From positions 186,001-250,000 of IMG/VR virus record IMGVR_UViG_3300044846_005229: a stretch of 64,000 nucleotides of DNA; one strand, given 5' to 3'. Position 1 is the first letter of the stretch, and each line of letters begins with the position of its first letter. The position numbers were made by a program, and so were the translations under genes. The notes below the pieces were generated by a model. That model had not been told where the DNA came from, ran no database searches, and saw nothing but the letters and a program-made list of their open reading frames with translations. Shown piece by piece: positions 802 through 40,423 of the stretch.

Positions 802-891
802 TAGGCGCGTAGGGAATCGAACCCTAACTAGCCGGTAATCTGCCGGAGAGGTCTTCATAAGGGACCCTGTGCTACCGTACACCACACGCCC
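802..891 (-). tRNA. tRNA with UAU anticodon (Ile, AUA-reading) and long variable arm
   Basis: GGGCGTG/CGCGCCT acceptor, GTGT/GCAC D stem, GGTC(C)/(A)GACC anticodon stem with loop CTTATGA, CCGG-CAGATTA-CCGG variable arm, TAGGG-TTCGATT-CCCTA T arm, A73; CCA not encoded. Confidence 0.8.
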
Positions 892-6983: not shown

Positions 6984-7137
6984 GGGCCCATTGTAGCATG
7001 TTTGATGGGGGTTGTCTTTCAGGGTATGACTGCCGGGGTATGACTGCCGGGGTCATCACTAGAGAAAGTCTGAGTCGGTACTAGATCCCCGTCCTAGCCA
7101 TTGGGGGGGTATCACTGAGGGCATTATATCCCGTGAT

Positions 7138-7599
7138 TTAATAGTCCCAGTACTCATGGTTTAAAAAGTCTAGTAAAAGTTGGATGATATTTCTTTTGCG
7201 TTTTTTGCTCTGTGGAGTAAACCTACCAAATTTCTCAAGTTCTTCGACAGATGCTTCCTGAAGCCAATAATGGAAAGAATCCATTTCCATGGAGCAAATT
7301 TCATTGAAGGCTAGGTCGGTGGCTTTCTTTGGGGGTTTGATGGACCGTGCGTAGTGGCTATTTGAATTATAAGTGTCAAAAACGCTAATTTCTTGAACTG
7401 GCTCAACCTTAACTTTTTCTTTCCCTCTTTTTGTAGGTAGAGATTTTAGTTCTAGTTCCTTTTCCAAGGCACCTATGAAGTTATTATACTTAATGTTTTC
7501 ATCAACGCGACTCAAGAAACGACTGTATTCATCGTCCATTTCATCTTCTGATTGGGAATGCTTTCTGAAATAATCAGGATCTATGATTGACATTTTCAT
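7138..7599 (-). CDS. hypothetical protein
   Basis: ORF in co-oriented array. Confidence 0.65.
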   Translation of the reverse strand: MKMSIIDPDYFRKHSQSEDEMDDEYSRFLSRVDENIKYNNFIGALEKELELKSLPTKRGKEKVKVEPVQEISVFDTYNSNSHYARSIKPPKKATDLAFNEICSMEMDSFHYWLQEASVEELEKFGRFTPQSKKRKRNIIQLLLDFLNHEYWDY

Positions 7600-7796
7600 C
7601 TAGTACGGCCTGAACAGCAAGGGAAAGATTATCCATTGGTCGGAAACTCCATCGGGATCAGAACTTGGCAATTATTTCGCCGGATAAACATCAGGGGGAT
7701 ACAACTGATTGATTGCGTCTCTAATTAGGAGAGCAGCGCTTTAAGGTTGTGATAGGCATTTTGCTGTGGGGGTTGTTTGGAACTGTTATCAGTGCC

Positions 7797-7825
7797 ACTC
7801 TAGCATGGTTGCTGCTAGGTGTCAA
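7797..7825 (-). promoter_or_regulatory. sigma70-like promoter
   Basis: TTGACA-17 nt-TAGAGT with extended TG. Confidence 0.6.
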
Positions 7826-7853
7826 CTCTTAACCAAGTTATAAATGTAGTGAA

Positions 7854-7965
7854 TGGGACCAGTAGGATTTGAACCTACACCTCTCCTTTAACGTAGGAAT
7901 TTAATTGCTGATGTATCTTTGACAAGATAACTTTCTTTAGCGCTCTGTCGTTGAGCTATGGTCCC
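7854..7965 (-). ncRNA. tRNA-like RNA with ~41-nt insert carrying a hairpin + CAGCAA between the D arm and an anticodon-like arm
   Basis: GGGACCA/TGGTCCC acceptor, GCTC/GAGC D stem, GTAGG-TTCAAAT-CCTAC T arm, TTCCT-ACGTTAA-AGGAG anticodon-like hairpin, insert containing TATCTT-GTCA-AAGATA-CAT-CAGCAA. Confidence 0.8.
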
Positions 7966-8005
7966 TTGTTTGCTTCGCAAATAGCTTGTTGAAACATGGT
8001 TTAGC

Positions 8006-8054
8006 TAGATAGTTGGTTTTCCGATTTTGAAGGGGATGGTTGCTGAACTATCTA
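8006..8054 (-). ncRNA. stand-alone CAGCAA stem-loop module
   Basis: TAGATAGTT/AACTATCTA 9-bp stem closing a 31-nt loop that starts CAGCAA and ends GAAAACC. Confidence 0.7.
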
Positions 8055-8072
8055 CGTTTGCCGAAGGCAAAG

Positions 8073-8199
8073 TCGAAGAGGCAAGATTCGAACTTGCGTA
8101 TGGCGGTTCCTTTAGCGCATTTGGTGTTGCTGAGCTACCTAAAGCATAACTAGATAGTCCTTTTGCATTACCGCCGCCTTACCACTTGGCTACTCTTCG
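8073..8199 (-). ncRNA. tRNA-like RNA (Cys-like scaffold) with enlarged anticodon loop carrying a hairpin + CAGCAA
   Basis: CGAAGAG/CTCTTCG acceptor, TAGCCAAGTGGTAAGGC D arm, GCGGT/ACCGC anticodon stem, GCAAG-TTCGAAT-CTTGC T arm; insert contains CTATCTAG/TTAGGTAG hairpin then CT-CAGCAA. Confidence 0.8.
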
Positions 8200-8233
8200 T
8201 TTTGGGTGTCTGGGTGTCTTAACCGTTAAAGGT

Positions 8234-8296
8234 CAACAAGGTGAGTTTTGCTGGATTTGAACCATTCCCCTTTGTTGCCCTGGTGAACTACCAGGG
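8234..8296 (-). ncRNA. structured element with T-loop hairpin and CAGCAA
   Basis: CCCTGGT-AGTTC-ACCAGGG hairpin; CAACAAAGG/CCTTGTTG stem enclosing TGG-TTCAAAT-CCA followed by GCAA. Confidence 0.5.
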
Positions 8297-8315
8297 AAGC
8301 TAACTTTATTTAAAC

Positions 8316-8367
8316 AAGATGGTTGGTTTTTCTGTTACAAAGAAAGGTTAGATTGCTGAACCATCTT
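8316..8367 (-). ncRNA. stand-alone CAGCAA stem-loop module
   Basis: AAGATGGTT/AACCATCTT 9-bp stem closing a 34-nt loop that starts CAGCAA and ends GAAAAACC; covaries with 8006-8054. Confidence 0.7.
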
Positions 8368-8407
8368 ACGGGATTGCCTTACTTACCGCCCATTAACCCT
8401 ATTTCCA

Positions 8408-9914
8408 TCAGGCGAATACCATACCCACAGAGTCATACCTTTCAGTATATACCGCGTCCCGCATCAGGGACAATGGGGGTAATTGCATTGCCGGTAAGAA
8501 CTGCGGTCAGGATTGACGGAGAGCAACCGCTAACGAGAGCGGTACCGGAATCATGGACCTTCATCGGGACGTTATCTGAGGAATTGACATTCCAGAAGAT
8601 GACATCAGGCAAGCTATAACCAGCTTGGGCATACTTGATTCGAATTGCTTCGTAGTTAGTGACTTTTTTTCCGCTATACCCCCAACCAGAACCAGTGCCA
8701 CCCATGACAACACAGTCATCAAACTGCATGTCTGAGACAATAATCAGTTTGCGGGGCATGTCTGACTCTGGAATGTTGTTCCGAACTGCAGTATCCAGAA
8801 TAAGGTCAAACGTCTTTTGGATGTCAGTGTTACCACCCCAATCTGCTCGGCTCAGGTTTCTAACCTTGCTGGAGAGACTATTGCCAGTCACAGTTTGTAG
8901 GGAGGGGTTACCCGAAAATGTTAGAAACTTGTTTTTCCAGATGCCAGTATTACGCTCTGCGATATACATCGCCAGAGAGATGGATACTGCCATCGGACGA
9001 CCCTCCATGGAACCGCTAACATCGGCAACAACAAGCCCATTCAATTCCTTGCCTTCCATGTAGTTGGGTAGAGCCTGCCAGAGGAGTTCAAGAGTATCGT
9101 TTGATTCGTTGTTATAGAGACACTTCTCAACGATGTCATACGGGTACAAAGTACCGGCATTGATTTTTGCCTCGCCTTTCTTGACTGCATCGAGGTAAGA
9201 CTGGTAGCGAGCACCATCATGGTTAGCAAAAGCTTTCCGATACATGAAGCCTGCACGAGAAGGCAACTTGCTATACTCAATGGCGTCCCACTCACGGGCA
9301 CACATTGGTTGTTCTACGATATTGATTTGGGTGCGAAGCGCAGTCAGGGCCTTGCGGTATTGACGCTCATTCCAACCCATTGCCTTAGCGATAAGACGGC
9401 CAACCCGCTTGGATTCCTTGCTAGAAGCGTTAATGGAAGGTAGCCATTTTGCTAGTAGTGACACTGGGTTTCCAACTTCGGTGTTCAGGTCAGTATTAAG
9501 CTGCGTCTTAATTGCTTCTAGGGCGATGACCCAAACTAGCGTCCCTTCGAGGGCCACAACATCGTCCCAGCGACCGTACTGCGGGATCAGGCCTACCAGC
9601 TTAGCTCCAATGGTCGCATCATTGCGAACCAGCTCCTTGAAGACTTCCCGGAAGATTTTTCGTTCTCCTTGCCCAATCCCCCTAATATCACGTGCCCAAA
9701 ACAGGATCCGGGTCGCAGTTTCAGGATCTTCGGCATAGGCTGACTTAAAGAGTTTAATGGCTGCATCAACATTATCACGGCAAGCTGCGATTTTACCGAA
9801 AAGGTCTAGGTTCTTTTGGCCCGTGGACCTATAGGCCTTTGCGCCGTTTGCAGTTGTGGTGATATTGGAGTTGGTATCCAGTTGGTTCTCAAGTGCATTC
9901 AAAAAGGTTGTCAT
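8408..9914 (-). CDS. DUF2828 family TROVE/Ro60-like + vWA domain protein (apparent +1 frameshift in the G5 run at 8475-8479)
   Basis: TTANGAKAYRSTG, WARDIRG.GQGER, YGRWDD, AKWLP, MIDAS VVADVSGSM, IVSDMQFD; removing one C restores the C-terminus ITPLSLMRDAVYTERYDSV. Confidence 0.85.
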
Positions 9915-10064
9915 TTTTCTTCTCTCAAGTTGATTGTTTTGTGTTTGTGTTTCGGATACAAATAATAGCTGTATCAACTTTGCCCCTAGGAGTTAATTTT
10001 AGGGGTGGTGGTGGGGGGCACTGACGGCCCCGATATTGGGCAGTTTGTAACTTAGCTGGGTCAA

Positions 10065-14560: not shown

Positions 14561-15652
14561 TCAGCCACTCTTCTTCCCCTTAGATAGCAACCACTCATTA
14601 CTAATGGCCTTAAAGGAAAACTCAGAGTCATTGGACTTGAATACTAAGCCCTCACGTTTAACGTTAGGATTCATGGACGGGCCATCGGCGTACGCTAGTA
14701 GCTCATCTAGGTTGGCGAAACTATCGGTTACACACATTGCGGGGTGTAGGACAGGGGCATGGGTTAAATCAGCGCCTAATGGAACCAGGTACTTGTCCAA
14801 GAGGTTCATTCTGGCCCCTGGCTTCATGTAGGTCTGGTTGTCGATATCGAAGATGTCGAACAGATATAGCCGTTGTCCCTTGATTCCTTCCTGATTGCCC
14901 TGGATGCCTTCTCCAAGGGTTTCCGACTGCAAGGCAATACTGTGACCAGTCTTCCCATTGTATGCAAGCATAGCATCGATAATGCCCTGGTCCCTAGCAG
15001 CCTTCCAGAAACTATTGCCTTCGGTTTCCTTGAGATCAAGGTTACGGCTGCAAACCCCAATGTCACCGTCTTTGACGTAAATCGTACATGAAGATCCGTC
15101 GAGCTTCAGGGTAACTTCGTAGGTCTCATTCCTGTGGGTCTCAAAGATTTCGCTAGCGATATTCTGACAACGTTCCTGGTCTGTCTTCACAAGGAAGCTC
15201 GGGAAGTTGCCTTTTGCAATGCCAGCCAAACAAGCCGGTACAGGAGCCTCCCATTTCTGAATGCCGAGAATTTCGGTTACGTCGTCTCCTTCCTGAAGGC
15301 CCCTCTCAAATGCGGTGACATAGTAACTGAAGTCTACATAGAGCTTTAGAGAAATAGGCAACAGCAACCCTTGGCTGAGTTGCCCACGGAGCTTAACGGT
15401 CTTGAGACGTTCGCCCTTCACGCCGTTATACTCACGGGGCTCTTTCCCATTAGAAAGGAAGGGCGCCAACTCGTGAGGAATAAATGAGTCGGGTTCTGCG
15501 TAAATTACCAAATCCCCTACTTCATACTTCCCCACAGAATCCACAACCCACCAGCCATTCACACGGTAGGCACAGATTCTATCGGCTTCAGGGATGGGGC
15601 GAATCTCAGCAATGCGCTGGACAGATGCAAGTTTGCGTTCGATGTTTGCCAT
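14561..15652 (-). CDS. ATP-dependent RNA ligase, DRB0094/Rnl2-like family
   Basis: RKLASVQRI N-terminal OB-like module, KTDQERCQN, motif I KLDGSS, SRN, REGLVFK, FKAISNEWL. Confidence 0.92.
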   Translation of the reverse strand: MANIERKLASVQRIAEIRPIPEADRICAYRVNGWWVVDSVGKYEVGDLVIYAEPDSFIPHELAPFLSNGKEPREYNGVKGERLKTVKLRGQLSQGLLLPISLKLYVDFSYYVTAFERGLQEGDDVTEILGIQKWEAPVPACLAGIAKGNFPSFLVKTDQERCQNIASEIFETHRNETYEVTLKLDGSSCTIYVKDGDIGVCSRNLDLKETEGNSFWKAARDQGIIDAMLAYNGKTGHSIALQSETLGEGIQGNQEGIKGQRLYLFDIFDIDNQTYMKPGARMNLLDKYLVPLGADLTHAPVLHPAMCVTDSFANLDELLAYADGPSMNPNVKREGLVFKSNDSEFSFKAISNEWLLSKGKKSG

Positions 15653-23840: not shown

Positions 23841-24950
23841 CTACCGGATCCCAAGCAGTTTGTCAAGTTGTTGGGGCCGTAGGTCTGCTAGCCACTGCCG
23901 GAAGGTAGGGTACCTGCCGGAGCGTATTGCGAAACAGGCTGCCGATACTGAGGGGGCATCTTTGAGAATTGCAATGGCGAATTCCTTTTGCGTTAAGGCT
24001 CCATACTTAAGAAGCAGAGTCTCACATAAAGATTGCATCGCGGGGATAGCAGAGTCTAGATGAATCGAAAACTTGTCTCTATATTCTGGAAAGTGCAATA
24101 GAAACTCATCTAAATCGTCACTAAGAAACAATTCCGAAAAGTCTGGGTCGCCATTGTTCCATGCCCGGTGTAGTTGGCAGTATAATCTAGACTTAATCTT
24201 AACCCTTCCAACCCCATCAAACAATACATAACCTTCATGATTTGAATCTCGCTTTTCAACTTTGGTAAGTACAGAGTCAAGGTCACTGAATTCGTAAGAT
24301 GGGGCCACCACATAGCCATACCACCCAAACTCTTCCAGATCACACTCTTCGAAGTCCTGATCTCGGTCTCGTACTGCTAGTAAGGGAAGTTTGGGCGCAT
24401 CGTAGTTAATAACATCTTTATTATCTAGGTGACATAACTCAAAGATGTAGCAAATTGACGGGTCTAGGCATTCCTTTAAGTACCCTACTTTTTCGAATAC
24501 ATCCCAGAATAATTCATCAAAGGTTTTTTTAGTTTTTCCTACTAGGCCATCCCCTGCTACTGAACCAGAAGTTGAAACGAGCCATTGCCCCCTATACTCA
24601 AACAATTTAATTAAGGAGCCGGAAAATTTCTCATAAACCTTGGTGCGAGACCAATCTAACTGATGGCAATGGCCCTCACCAATGTTAAAGAATCTATCGA
24701 ACGCATATGCAACCAGGCGGTAATACGGCGAGTGATCCCCATCGTTATCAACACGCTCGACCACAGCACCACGGCAGGCACAAACCAGCGGATTTGATTT
24801 GGATGCTAAAATCGTCCCATATTTCAAATTAAAAAGGTTCGGATACCTCTCATCGCGAGTAACACGAATGTCATACTCGGCCAGCTCGTCCAGGGCATTG
24901 TAACCCCGCTCGTTAAGCCAGTCAATCAAGTAGTGGCGCAAGTTTTCCAT
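23841..24950 (-). CDS. T4 Rnl1-like RNA ligase with motif I variant KFSGS
   Basis: CRG, FDRFFN.GE, YEKFSGSL, IFEL, EGYV, RVKIKS..Y pattern of Rnl1 family. Confidence 0.85.
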   Translation of the reverse strand: MENLRHYLIDWLNERGYNALDELAEYDIRVTRDERYPNLFNLKYGTILASKSNPLVCACRGAVVERVDNDGDHSPYYRLVAYAFDRFFNIGEGHCHQLDWSRTKVYEKFSGSLIKLFEYRGQWLVSTSGSVAGDGLVGKTKKTFDELFWDVFEKVGYLKECLDPSICYIFELCHLDNKDVINYDAPKLPLLAVRDRDQDFEECDLEEFGWYGYVVAPSYEFSDLDSVLTKVEKRDSNHEGYVLFDGVGRVKIKSRLYCQLHRAWNNGDPDFSELFLSDDLDEFLLHFPEYRDKFSIHLDSAIPAMQSLCETLLLKYGALTQKEFAIAILKDAPSVSAACFAIRSGRYPTFRQWLADLRPQQLDKLLGIR

Positions 24951-39920: not shown

Positions 39921-40165
39921 GGGGACCGAAGCCCCCCGCAATGAGTCAGAATGCTATCGCTCAAACGGCGACGGCAGTCCTCTCGAATTTGACGATTTTG
40001 TTAGCGTCTATGTTGTGCTTATGCAAGCGGCTTTCGGTAATTGGCTTGCTGTCGGTCGATTCCAGAGCGGACCCTCGAAAGGGAAATGGATCCGGGGCGA
40101 TTCGAACGCCCGTGTCGCGCAGTAGTGACAACTACCTACACCCAGTTTTTAGCCGTATGGTAGGG
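39921..40165 (-). ncRNA. ssrA: two-piece (circularly permuted) tmRNA; tag ANKIVKFERTAVAV*
   Basis: T arm GGGCG-TTCGAAT-CGCCC (40095-40111) and 3' acceptor CGGATCC-A precede a 12-nt spacer and 5' acceptor GGGTCCG with G3-U70; TAGAC-GCT resume context; tag ORF 39961-40005; outer ends approximate. Confidence 0.92.
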
Positions 40166-40177
40166 CTTTAACAATTA

Positions 40178-40423
40178 TTACCCGTTACAGTTAAAAGTCG
40201 ATGTAATCTCATACTGCCTAAGTAAGTTAAACAACTCAGTTTGAAGGTCTTCGAAGCCGCCCACAAGTTGATCCTGAGTGACCGCATAGCAAGGACCCAC
40301 TTTAGAGCCAGCCCAAGGTATGATTTGTTTGTGCTCTAGAATCTTGTTCCTGTACTTAAGAAGTAGGGAGTTAATCCCGGAGGCTAGCTGAACTTTATCG
40401 GATAGAACTATTTGTTTTAACAT
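40178..40423 (-). CDS. hypothetical protein
   Basis: Start MLKQIV. Confidence 0.55.
   Translation of the reverse strand: MLKQIVLSDKVQLASGINSLLLKYRNKILEHKQIIPWAGSKVGPCYAVTQDQLVGGFEDLQTELFNLLRQYEITSTFNCNG

What the first reader, a model, noticed from the sequence alone, without database searches (positions are those of the whole stretch)
8073..8199. tRNA-Cys-like body with ~55 extra nt in the anticodon loop: mimic or spliced precursor?
Seen: the D arm TAGCCAAGTGGTAAGGC, GCGGT/ACCGC stem and T arm are canonical, and TGCAAAA (Cys GCA context) survives at the 5' side of the enlarged loop. The insert is far too short for a group I intron. Inference: either a non-decoding tRNA mimic, or an intron-like insert removed by a nuclease and sealed by one of the two RNA ligases in this window, which would be unusual for a bacterial virus.
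Basis: partly seen in the sequence, partly recalled or inferred. Interest (0 to 1): 0.65.

Follow-up and report, generated by a model that had tools for sequence, protein, structure and literature searches.

The report
Phage tRNA mimic beside Ro-like gene
This 127-base gene is neither a broken nor an intron-bearing tRNA-Cys: it belongs to a conserved family of tRNA look-alikes, with a fixed hairpin-plus-CAGCAAU module where the anticodon loop should be, that freshwater cyanophages encode directly behind a Ro60-like RNA-binding protein, so it is probably a new kind of phage Y RNA.

Summary
Window 8073-8199 (minus strand) scores as a full tRNA in Rfam (47.6 bits), with 62 nt where the 7-nt anticodon loop should be.

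It is not a one-off:
- A second insert-bearing tRNA-like lies at 7854-7965.
- A decayed third lies at 8240-8300.
- 25 of 27 related phage loci carry 1-4 such genes.
- At least 63 unique sequences with at least 25 different acceptor stems were found.

All share one module: a 7-8 bp helix (AGAU/AUCU core, compensatory changes), then CAGCAAU, plus an A-rich strand. The same module also occurs free-standing as stem-bulge-stem hairpins in the spacers around these RNAs and after true tRNAs.

The array always lies just downstream of, and on the same strand as, a DUF2828/vWA protein gene. Its predicted fold matches Ro60/TROVE full-length (Z 15.6 to phage phiLo Ro60).

No insert-less allele exists (0 versus 13 contigs). 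The genome has no tRNA-splicing endonuclease, and no ribozyme or intron family matches. Cutting out the insert would not restore an anticodon loop.

Best reading: a non-decoding tRNA mimic, analogous to YrlA Y RNAs but with unpermuted topology and a different motif. Binding and expression are untested.

The parts
8073..8199 (-). The finding: a 127-nt tRNA-like RNA ('type c'). Acceptor 8193-8199/8074-8080; D arm 8176-8190; anticodon-type stem 8170-8174/8103-8107; variable loop 8098-8102; T arm 8081-8097; discriminator A at 8073.
   Evidence: Rfam tRNA 47.6 bits, full model. The MFE and RNAalifold structures are both a cloverleaf with an extended anticodon arm. All elbow nucleotides are present (read).
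8108..8169 (-). The 62-nt module that replaces the anticodon loop. A-rich strand 8158-8169; helix P1 8151-8157 pairing with 8135-8141, capped by 8142-8150; conserved UCAGCAAC 8126-8133; 3' tail 8108-8125 ending in UAAAGGA.
   Evidence: P1 keeps pairing through changes on both sides in orthologues and paralogues. C-A/U-G-C-A is invariant or nearly so in 28 capped copies. Model R2 hits here (29.3 bits, E 1.4e-4 genome-wide).
7854..7965 (-). Second tRNA-like RNA ('type b', 112 nt). The same module (P1 7913-7931, UCAGCAAU 7904-7911) sits between the D arm and an anticodon-like stem-loop at 7883-7899 (loop ACGUUAA).
   Evidence: Rfam tRNA 47.8 bits. Model R2 47.1 bits. Orthologues in 12 or more loci.
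8317..8366 (-). Free-standing spacer module A. AGAUGGUU pairs with AACCAUCU; the internal loop starts with CAGCAAU; there is a distal stem with a 7-nt loop and an A-rich return strand.
   Evidence: Model R1 56.6 bits. Helix covariation.
8007..8053 (-). Free-standing spacer module B. It starts 19 nt after the 3' end of the finding's RNA, and a small hairpin (8057-8071) lies between them.
   Evidence: Model R1 44.5 bits. Orthologous copies occur in relatives.
8442..9977 (-). Gene for a Ro60-fold protein (DUF2828 + DUF7788/vWA; PHROG 850 'RNA-binding protein'), immediately upstream on the same strand. The true start is probably a little inside this ORF, because homologues are about 487-490 aa.
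   Evidence: Pfam and PHROGs. AF2 model with pLDDT 71. The Foldseek top 13 hits are all Ro60/TROVE. VIA-align Z 15.6, 13.3 and 12.9 to phiLo, human and D. radiodurans Ro60 over model residues 54-511. The MIDAS-type residues D319, S321 and S323 are invariant.
8240..8300 (-). Decayed remnant of a third tRNA-like gene. A 5' acceptor strand is fused to a T-loop-like GGUUCAAAUCC, and there is no 3' acceptor strand.
   Evidence: Comparison with the intact 118-nt homologue at L001:4856-4973.

Best explanation
The 127-nt RNA is a non-decoding tRNA mimic. It keeps the acceptor, D and T arms and every elbow-forming nucleotide, so it should fold into the tRNA L-shape and be handled by tRNA enzymes (RNase P/Z, the CCA-adding enzyme, modification enzymes). 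Its anticodon stem does not end in a 7-nt loop. It opens into a large internal loop (an A-rich 5' strand, and a 3' strand that begins with the conserved CAGCAAY) closed by a 7-bp hairpin. This stem-bulge-stem module is a portable unit. The phage lineage uses it in three circular permutations: capping the anticodon stem (this RNA), inserted between the D arm and the anticodon arm (the neighbouring RNA), and free-standing in the spacers of tRNA and tRNA-like arrays. I propose that the module is the docking site for the Ro60-fold ring protein encoded directly upstream. On that view these RNAs are functional analogues of Y RNAs (YrlA for the tRNA-like form, YrlB-like for the spacer hairpins). They would link the Ro-like ring to tRNA-handling or RNA-repair and decay enzymes during infection, in a genome that also carries Rnl1, Rnl2, a CCA-adding-type enzyme, a tmRNA and 20 or more tRNAs. 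Shown: the tRNA-like fold, the module and its covariation, family-wide conservation, fixed synteny with the gene, and the Ro60-like fold of the protein. Inferred: transcription and processing, protein-RNA binding, and the downstream function.
For: (1) tRNA body: Rfam 47.6 bits over the full model; cloverleaf with an extended arm. (2) Family: 25 of 27 loci that encode a homologue of the upstream protein (61% identity or more) carry 1-4 tRNA-likes of 112-128 nt within about 2.5 kb downstream on the same strand. Across 103 loci there are 63 unique sequences with at least 25 acceptor stems. (3) Module structure: the capped helix is 94% paired, with both-side changes at 4 of 7 pairs. The spacer helix is 96% paired, with 3 covarying pairs. 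In an unbiased test, 45 motif hits had an exact 7-nt partner, against 0.2 of 63 control triplets. The enclosing anticodon-type stem is kept with different sequences: GCGGU/ACCGC, CUGGU/ACCGG, GAGCU/AGCUU and others. (4) Location: genome-wide model searches in four genomes of about 250-280 kb place every copy within about 5 kb of the Ro-like gene. The exception is three copies in this genome's tRNA cluster. All copies in this genome are on the transcribed strand. (5) Protein: Ro60/TROVE are the top full-length fold matches. The family is annotated 'Ro-like RNA binding protein' in mycobacteriophages. In phage Tyson, Rfam YrlA hits 125 nt downstream of it (36.4 bits, E 1.6e-6 locally). (6) Precedent: YrlA RNAs lie within 4 kb of Ro60 on the same strand and mimic tRNA (PMC4201824). 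Thermus phage phiLo Ro60 binds two adjacent stem-bulge-stem Y-like RNAs (PMC12135203). (7) Cultured relative: Synechococcus phage B3 has the same layout (promoter, two spacer modules, a 110-nt tRNA-like annotated 'tRNA-Pseudo-GCA', another module, then normal tRNAs) right after its homologue gp345.
Against: There are no binding, expression or end-mapping data; the two metatranscriptome runs hold no contig over 8073-8199. The protein matches Ro60 only at fold level (TM about 0.45-0.5 on a model of pLDDT 71). Pfam TROVE and PDB sequence and profile searches find nothing. Rfam YrlA does not match here even at E 10, and the motif CAGCAAU differs from the Y-RNA GNCGAA/CGAA motif. Three spacer copies lie 64 kb away in the tRNA cluster, so the module may serve tRNA processing independently of the protein. 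The gene-RNA co-occurrence (15 of 16 records) comes from one phage lineage and is not independent evidence. More distant homologues of the protein (41% identity and below, e.g. KVP40, a Felixounavirus, Listeria AG20) lack this RNA type.
Confidence: 0.6

Rival explanations
1. Module as a processing signal, independent of the Ro-like protein. The AGAU/AUCU helix plus CAGCAAU would be recognised and cut by a host or phage endoribonuclease, or be a small unrecognised ribozyme, that separates tRNAs from polycistronic precursors. Copies inside the tRNA-likes would then yield tRNA halves or fragments.
For: Spacer copies start 2-5 nt after tRNA 3' ends and end 2-4 nt before the next tRNA-like. Three follow true tRNAs 64 kb from the Ro-like gene. 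The first copy follows a TTGACA-17-TAAGAT promoter in relatives.
Against: No Rfam ribozyme family matches even at E 10. The helix is too short for RNase III. It does not explain why intact tRNA bodies with varied acceptor stems are kept around the module, or why the array stays next to the Ro-like gene. It could also coexist with Ro-like binding.
Confidence: 0.15
2. Decoy or sponge for tRNA-targeting host defences. The tRNA-likes would present tRNA bodies, some with anticodon-like loops, to anticodon nucleases or other tRNA-binding toxins. The module would merely block decoding.
For: RNA-repair and translation-rescue context: Rnl1, Rnl2, tmRNA, many tRNAs. Type-b members carry 7-nt, mostly U33-containing loops with varied triplets.
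Against: The finding's own RNA has no anticodon loop. The strict conservation of CAGCAAU and P1 implies a specific ligand for the module itself. No nuclease target can be named.
Confidence: 0.1
3. Dead tRNA genes disrupted by a small palindromic mobile repeat (MITE-like, with terminal inverted repeats AGAU.../...AUCU).
For: The module has inverted-repeat ends and several copies per genome. GenBank annotates the B3 copy as a tRNA pseudogene. One copy in the window is clearly decayed.
Against: All copies in this genome are on one strand and confined to two loci. The copies inside tRNA-likes are circular permutations, not simple insertions. The tRNA bodies keep all stems through compensatory changes, and the elbow nucleotides are retained over protein divergence from 93% to 57% identity. 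No insert-less alleles exist.
Confidence: 0.07
4. Spliced precursor: the insert is an intron, cut out and re-ligated (by Rnl1 or Rnl2) to give a decoding tRNA-Cys.
For: Two RNA ligases are encoded 6-16 kb away. GCA occurs in the 5' linker. A genuine presence/absence hairpin insert exists in the anticodon loop of tRNA-Ile(UAU) in some relatives, so small inserts in tRNA loops do occur in this phage group.
Against: No junction restores a 7-nt loop with U33. The discriminator is A, not the U of Cys tRNAs and of the phage's own tRNA-Cys. There is no splicing endonuclease and no RtcB, and no group I or other intron family matches. Alleles: 0 insert-less versus 13 insert-bearing contigs. In most family members the module lies outside the anticodon loop.
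Confidence: 0.05

Closest known systems
YrlA-type bacterial and phage Y RNAs (Rfam RF02553; Chen et al. 2014, PMC4201824)
   Same: A non-coding RNA with a tRNA-like acceptor/T/D domain joined to a stem-internal loop-stem. It is encoded within a few kb of a Ro60-type gene on the same strand. There are several paralogues per locus, including short forms that lack the tRNA part (YrlB; compare the spacer hairpins here).
   Different: The topology is the circular permutation. Here the ends are at the acceptor stem and the module is closed by a hairpin. In YrlA the ends form the Ro-binding stem and the acceptor is closed by a loop. The conserved motif is CAGCAAU, not GNCGAAN0-1G. There is no Rfam match. 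The partner protein is the DUF2828 type, which is not recognised by Pfam TROVE.
Thermus phage phiLo Ro60 with Yrl1/Yrl2 (PMC12135203; PDB 9KOP, 9L5Y)
   Same: A phage-encoded Ro60-fold protein (the best structural match, Z 15.6) with adjacent small RNAs built as a 5'-3' stem flanking a bulge that carries a short conserved motif. This is the architecture of the spacer modules here.
   Different: The phiLo RNAs lie upstream of the gene, carry CGAA and are not tRNA-like. Binding is demonstrated there and not here.
Intron-containing tRNAs (cyanobacterial group I introns in tRNA-Leu/fMet; archaeal bulge-helix-bulge introns)
   Same: A tRNA gene with extra sequence in the anticodon arm.
   Different: At 55 nt the insert is far too short for group I, and no Rfam match was found. 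The genome has no splicing endonuclease. The insert is fixed and sequence-conserved, and cutting it out would not leave a working loop.
'tRNA-Pseudo-GCA' annotated in Synechococcus phage B3 (MN695334.1, b3_0347)
   Same: A homologous family member in a cultured phage, at the same position behind the Ro-like gene gp345.
   Different: It is filed there as a pseudogene. The GCA call comes from the module's CUGCAAU variant, not from an anticodon loop.

Membership tests
Decoding tRNA-Cys | Cloverleaf with conserved elbow nucleotides; score above the Rfam tRNA threshold | tested here: met
   47.6 bits against a gathering score of 29, model positions 1-71. U8, A14, G18, G19, U54, U55, C56, A58 and G15:C48 are present.
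Decoding tRNA-Cys | 7-nt anticodon loop with U33 and a GCA anticodon | tested here: not met
   62 nt lie between the stem strands. GCA is out of register, because the loop starts A-A-U-G-C-A.
Decoding tRNA-Cys | Discriminator U73 (Cys identity element; established knowledge) | tested here: not met
   The discriminator is A at 8073. The phage's real tRNA-Cys(GCA), at genome 255377-255452, ends in U.
Intron-bearing tRNA | Recognisable intron class (group I or II, or another self-splicing RNA) | tested here: not met
   No Rfam family other than tRNA matches at E up to 10 in 7000-9500.
Intron-bearing tRNA | Splicing endonuclease available (archaeal or eukaryal type) | tested here: not met
   PF01974 is absent from the 279-kb phage genome. 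The host was not tested.
Intron-bearing tRNA | Intron-less alleles or orthologues exist; excision restores a canonical loop | tested here: not met
   0 insert-less versus 13 insert-bearing contigs in IMG/VR for the same body. No junction gives U33-NNN-R37.
Intron-bearing tRNA | A joined mature RNA is made | tested here: inconclusive
   Only assembled contigs of two metatranscriptomes were available, and none covers the site.
YrlA / Y RNA | Match to the Rfam YrlA covariance model | tested here: not met
   No hit at E up to 10. The same model does hit next to a homologous protein gene in phage Tyson.
YrlA / Y RNA | tRNA-like T arm, D arm and acceptor stem | tested here: met
YrlA / Y RNA | Encoded within about 4 kb of a Ro60 orthologue, on the same strand | tested here: met
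   The RNA starts 243 nt after the stop codon of the Ro60-fold ORF, on the same strand. The same holds in 25 of 27 related loci and in phage B3.
YrlA / Y RNA | 5' and 3' ends pair to form the Ro-binding stem; acceptor closed by a loop | tested here: not met
   The order is the normal tRNA order with a free acceptor stem. Only the free-standing spacer modules have a terminal 5'-3' stem.
YrlA / Y RNA | GNCGAAN0-1G / CGAA motif | tested here: not met
   The conserved motif is (N)CAGCAAU(U).
YrlA / Y RNA | Physically bound by the Ro60 protein | not testable with these tools
   No protein-RNA docking or experimental data are available.
Ro60/TROVE protein (the neighbouring gene) | HEAT-repeat ring plus C-terminal vWA domain with a MIDAS motif | tested here: met
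   Full-length structural matches to Ro60 (Foldseek E 1e-8; VIA Z 15.6, 388 residues aligned). A DxSxS motif is invariant. The model is of medium quality (pLDDT 71).
Ro60/TROVE protein (the neighbouring gene) | Sequence match to Pfam TROVE (PF05731) or to solved Ro60 sequences | tested here: not met
   It belongs to DUF2828/DUF7788 instead.

The most novel reading that the evidence does not exclude
The CAGCAAU stem-bulge-stem module is a portable docking site for a DUF2828-type Ro-like ring. Cyanophages build it into unpermuted tRNA mimics and also into the spacers of their tRNA operons. This would be the first RNA partner assigned to the large DUF2828 'Ro-like' phage protein family. It would also be the first Y-RNA-type system with normal tRNA topology. 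It would tie a Ro-like particle directly to the processing, quality control or repair of phage tRNAs.
Probability: 0.4. Interest if true: 0.8.

Novelty: new variant of a known kind. Interest (0 to 1): 0.65.

Why it matters
Ro60-Y RNA particles are conserved from bacteria to humans, but what they do in phages is barely explored. DUF2828 'Ro-like' proteins occur in at least 694 sequenced phages, including Felixounavirus, Listeria, Staphylococcus, Vibrio and mycobacteriophages, and I found no RNA partner described for them in the literature searched. A clearly delimited, covarying RNA module next to that gene gives a directly testable ligand. A cultured system, Synechococcus phage B3, carries the same arrangement. 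The result also matters for annotation. These genes are currently missed, called pseudo-tRNAs, or given arbitrary anticodons with 'introns', which distorts phage tRNA inventories. Finally, the three permutations of one module show how tRNA mimics can be assembled by duplication and permutation.

Tried and rejected
- ARAGORN's default run and Rfam's gathering run both miss the RNA. ARAGORN with introns allowed gives arbitrary anticodon and intron calls, different for each orthologue. These were not used for identity.
- I looked by eye for hammerhead, HDV-like, twister or pistol cores in the module on both strands. None fits, and Rfam gives no ribozyme hit.
- Sequence and profile searches of the protein against PDB, and Pfam TROVE on the genome, found no Ro60 match. 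Only the fold comparison links them.
- RNA evidence: 24 runs hold the DNA and 2 are RNA libraries. Their contigs cover only neighbouring ORFs or a spacer of relatives, not the tRNA-like. No joints were relevant, so the RNA evidence settles nothing about expression or splicing.
- An insert-less allele search in IMG/VR found nothing.
- Pairing between CAGCAAU and the A-rich strand: RNAalifold proposes a 3-bp UGC/GCA helix in the Cys-like subfamily, but it is invariant and absent from other subfamilies. I left it open.
- A MAFFT alignment of all type-c members misaligns the 5' strand of the anticodon-type stem. I tabulated that stem with a script instead; its register choice is noisy for a few rows.
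- A literature search for DUF2828, Ro-like phage RNAs and cyanophage pseudo-tRNAs found no description of this family.

Full report
**Where the window comes from.** The window is bases 186001-250000 of a 279,339-bp IMG/VR phage record with direct terminal repeats. Small ORFs run almost all on the minus strand. The genome has 22 tRNA matches and a cyanobacterial-type permuted tmRNA. Its nearest cultured relatives are the freshwater Synechococcus phages B3 and B23, family Kyanoviridae. The DNA of the region occurs in at least 22 lake or freshwater metagenome runs.

**The observation.** Read on the minus strand, 8199 to 8073 is a complete tRNA body:
- a 7-bp acceptor stem, U8 and A9;
- a D arm with G18 and G19, then G26;
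- a 5-bp anticodon-type stem, GCGGU/ACCGC;
- a 5-nt variable loop;
- a canonical T arm (UUCGAAU) and discriminator A.

Between the two strands of the anticodon stem lie 62 nt instead of 7. Rfam's tRNA model aligns end to end at 47.6 bits. ARAGORN's default run and Rfam's default filters miss it. The sequence UGCAAAA is there, but not in anticodon-loop register.

**It is not alone.** A second tRNA-like with a 41-nt insert lies at 7965-7854 (47.8 bits). A decayed third lies at 8300-8240. Both inserts share a 17-nt motif, AG(A/G)UA-N2-3-UCAGCAAY. The same motif occurs in five hairpins elsewhere in the genome: two flank these RNAs (8366-8317 and 8053-8007), and three follow true tRNAs (Met, Phe, Leu) in the main tRNA cluster.

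**The neighbouring gene.**
- The ORF directly upstream on the same strand (8442-9977) is DUF2828 + DUF7788 with weak vWA matches. PHROGs places it in family 850, 'RNA-binding protein'.
- An AlphaFold model built on 17 homologues (pLDDT 71) gives Ro60/TROVE structures as its 13 best Foldseek hits over the full length.
- VIA-align gives Z 15.6 (phage phiLo Ro60), 13.3 (human Ro60) and 12.9 (D. radiodurans Rsr) across model residues 54-511. This is well above the vWA-only matches, which reach at most Z 8.8.
- A DxSxS MIDAS-type motif is invariant.
- Sequence methods do not connect the protein to TROVE.
- The family occurs in 694 INPHARED phage records and is often annotated 'Ro-like RNA binding protein'.
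- In Mycobacterium phage Tyson, the Rfam YrlA model hits 125 nt downstream of it (36.4 bits, below the gathering score; E 1.6e-6 locally).

**Comparative evidence.**
- A search of IMG/VR with the protein returned 27 loci. In all 25 loci with 61% identity or more, ARAGORN with introns allowed finds 1-4 'intron' tRNAs of 112-128 nt within about 2.5 kb downstream on the same strand. The anticodon calls are arbitrary. These gave 32 unique sequences.
- After further pattern scans the census was 63 unique module-bearing tRNA-likes with at least 25 different acceptor strands.
- The intergenic DNA between them is not alignable. Only the tRNA-likes and the hairpins are conserved.
- Phage B3 has the same layout after its homologue gp345: a TTGACA-17-TAAGAT promoter, two spacer hairpins, a 110-nt tRNA-like that GenBank labels 'tRNA-Pseudo-GCA', another hairpin, then normal tRNAs.

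**Anatomy of the module.** All copies share these features:
- helix P1, whose 5'-AGAUNNN strand runs straight into (N)CAGCAAU(U);
- a linker;
- a second helix, P2;
- an A-rich strand that returns to the NNNAUCU strand of P1.

Three permutations exist:
- (a) Spacer form. P1 is formed by the two ends, and P2 is a small stem, often with a 7-nt loop. This is the classic Y-RNA shape.
- (b) Majority tRNA-like form. P1 is capped by a 4-6-nt loop. The tRNA body lies between P2 and the A-rich strand, so the module appears inserted between tRNA positions 26 and 27, and P2 looks like an anticodon arm. Its loop triplets vary: UGU, AGG, GUU, GGU, UUU and others.
- (c) The finding's form. P2 is the anticodon-type stem itself, capped by the tRNA body.

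The structure is supported as follows:
- Spacer P1: 96% of cells are paired, with both-side changes at 3 pairs. No shuffle or slid control reached this. That alignment was selected for pairing, so I also ran an unbiased count: 45 motif hits had an exact 7-nt partner, against 0.2 of 63 control triplets.
- Capped P1: 94% of cells are paired, with both-side changes at 4 of 7 pairs.
- The enclosing stem of type c is kept with different sequences.
- Within the Cys-like orthologues, the acceptor stem and P1 show compensatory changes.

**Distribution.** Covariance models of the spacer form (R1) and the capped form (R2) were searched over four whole genomes.
- This genome: 5 R1 hits and 2 R2 hits, and nothing else in 279 kb.
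- Two complete relatives and phage B3: every hit lies within about 5 kb of the Ro-like gene.
- All copies in this genome are on the transcribed strand.

A pattern scan for one spacer variant found 40 stretches. 15 of the 16 larger records among them encode the Ro-like protein; the exception is a 30%-complete fragment. All these records belong to one lineage, so this shows stable linkage, not independent association.

**Against splicing.**
- Nothing but tRNA matches in Rfam.
- The genome has no tRNA-splicing endonuclease and no RtcB.
- The same tRNA body never occurs without the insert in IMG/VR: 0 versus 13 contigs.
- No excision restores U33-NNN-R37.
- In most family members the module is not in the anticodon loop at all.

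**Against Cys identity.**
- A normal tRNA-Cys(GCA) with discriminator U exists elsewhere in the genome, whereas this RNA has discriminator A.
- Its D arm is identical to that of the phage's tRNA-His.

RNA-level data could not be obtained. Two metatranscriptomes hold only contigs of neighbouring sequence from relatives.

**Interpretation.** The RNA is a non-decoding tRNA mimic and a member of a conserved phage family (high confidence). Most probably it is the RNA partner of the adjacent Ro60-fold protein, analogous to YrlA/YrlB and to the phiLo Yrl RNAs (PMC4201824, PMC12135203). The module would be the docking site, and the tRNA-like body the handle for tRNA enzymes (moderate confidence, inferred). 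The context fits an RNA-repair or translation-rescue island: Rnl2-like 14561-15652, Rnl1-like 23841-24950, macro/phosphatase and metallophosphoesterase genes, tmRNA, and a CCA-adding-type enzyme just outside the window. The main rival is that the module is a precursor-processing signal unrelated to the protein.

**Novelty.** It differs from YrlA in topology (a circular permutation), in motif and in protein subfamily, and it fails the Rfam YrlA model. I therefore file it as a new variant of the Y-RNA/tRNA-mimic kind, not as a YrlA member. I found no published description.

Noticed in passing
window 39921-40183 (-): Phage-encoded tmRNA of the cyanobacterial permuted (two-piece) type: Rfam RF01851 72.8 bits and RF04321 56.1 bits. 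It points to a cyanobacterial host and adds to the translation-rescue gene set.
   Followed up: no
window 802-891 (-): A 90-nt tRNA-Ile(UAU) with an unusually long variable arm (a 4-bp stem with a 7-nt loop). Similar 88-90-nt copies occur in relatives (L014, L018).
   Followed up: partly
window 8240-8300 (-): Decayed third tRNA-like. Its 5' acceptor strand is fused to a T-loop-like sequence and it has no 3' acceptor strand. The intact 118-nt homologue is at L001:4856-4973.
   Followed up: yes
L038, L041, L051, L068 (relatives of 224-258 kb): A tRNA-Ile(UAU) nearly identical to phage B3's intact tRNA-Ile-TAT carries a hairpin insert of about 49 nt inside its anticodon loop, with no CAGCAAU module. 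This is a true presence/absence insertion and a better candidate for a small tRNA intron or an inactivating insertion in this phage group.
   Followed up: partly
window 8057-8071 (-); genome 258045-258063 and 258584-258602 region (-): A small conserved hairpin, UUUGC-N3-5-GCAAA, sits between a tRNA (or tRNA-like) 3' end and the following spacer module in this genome.
   Followed up: no
L030:4550-4658 (+), Mycobacterium phage Tyson: A sub-threshold but full-length Rfam YrlA match (36.4 bits) lies in the unannotated 370-nt gap right after the 'Ro-like RNA binding protein' gene (DUF2828 family).
   Followed up: partly
L031:1470-2021 (+), Listeria phage AG20; L026:1831-2047 (+): A ROOL RNA match (90.1 bits, just under gathering) lies about 1 kb upstream of the Ro-like gene of a Listeria phage. 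A short RNase P class A-like match (67 bits) lies in an IMG/VR relative. In L026 a tRNA with a CUA anticodon directly follows the Ro-like gene.
   Followed up: no
L018:4336-4388, L024:6258-6310: In some spacer modules a T-arm-like hairpin (GGUUCGAUUCC) takes the place of the distal stem. These are intermediate forms between the bare module and the tRNA-like RNAs.
   Followed up: no
genome 179217-179633 (-), just upstream of the window: A CCA-adding-type nucleotidyltransferase (PF01743, 63.8 bits) is encoded by the phage. None of the tRNA-likes encodes a 3' CCA.
   Followed up: no
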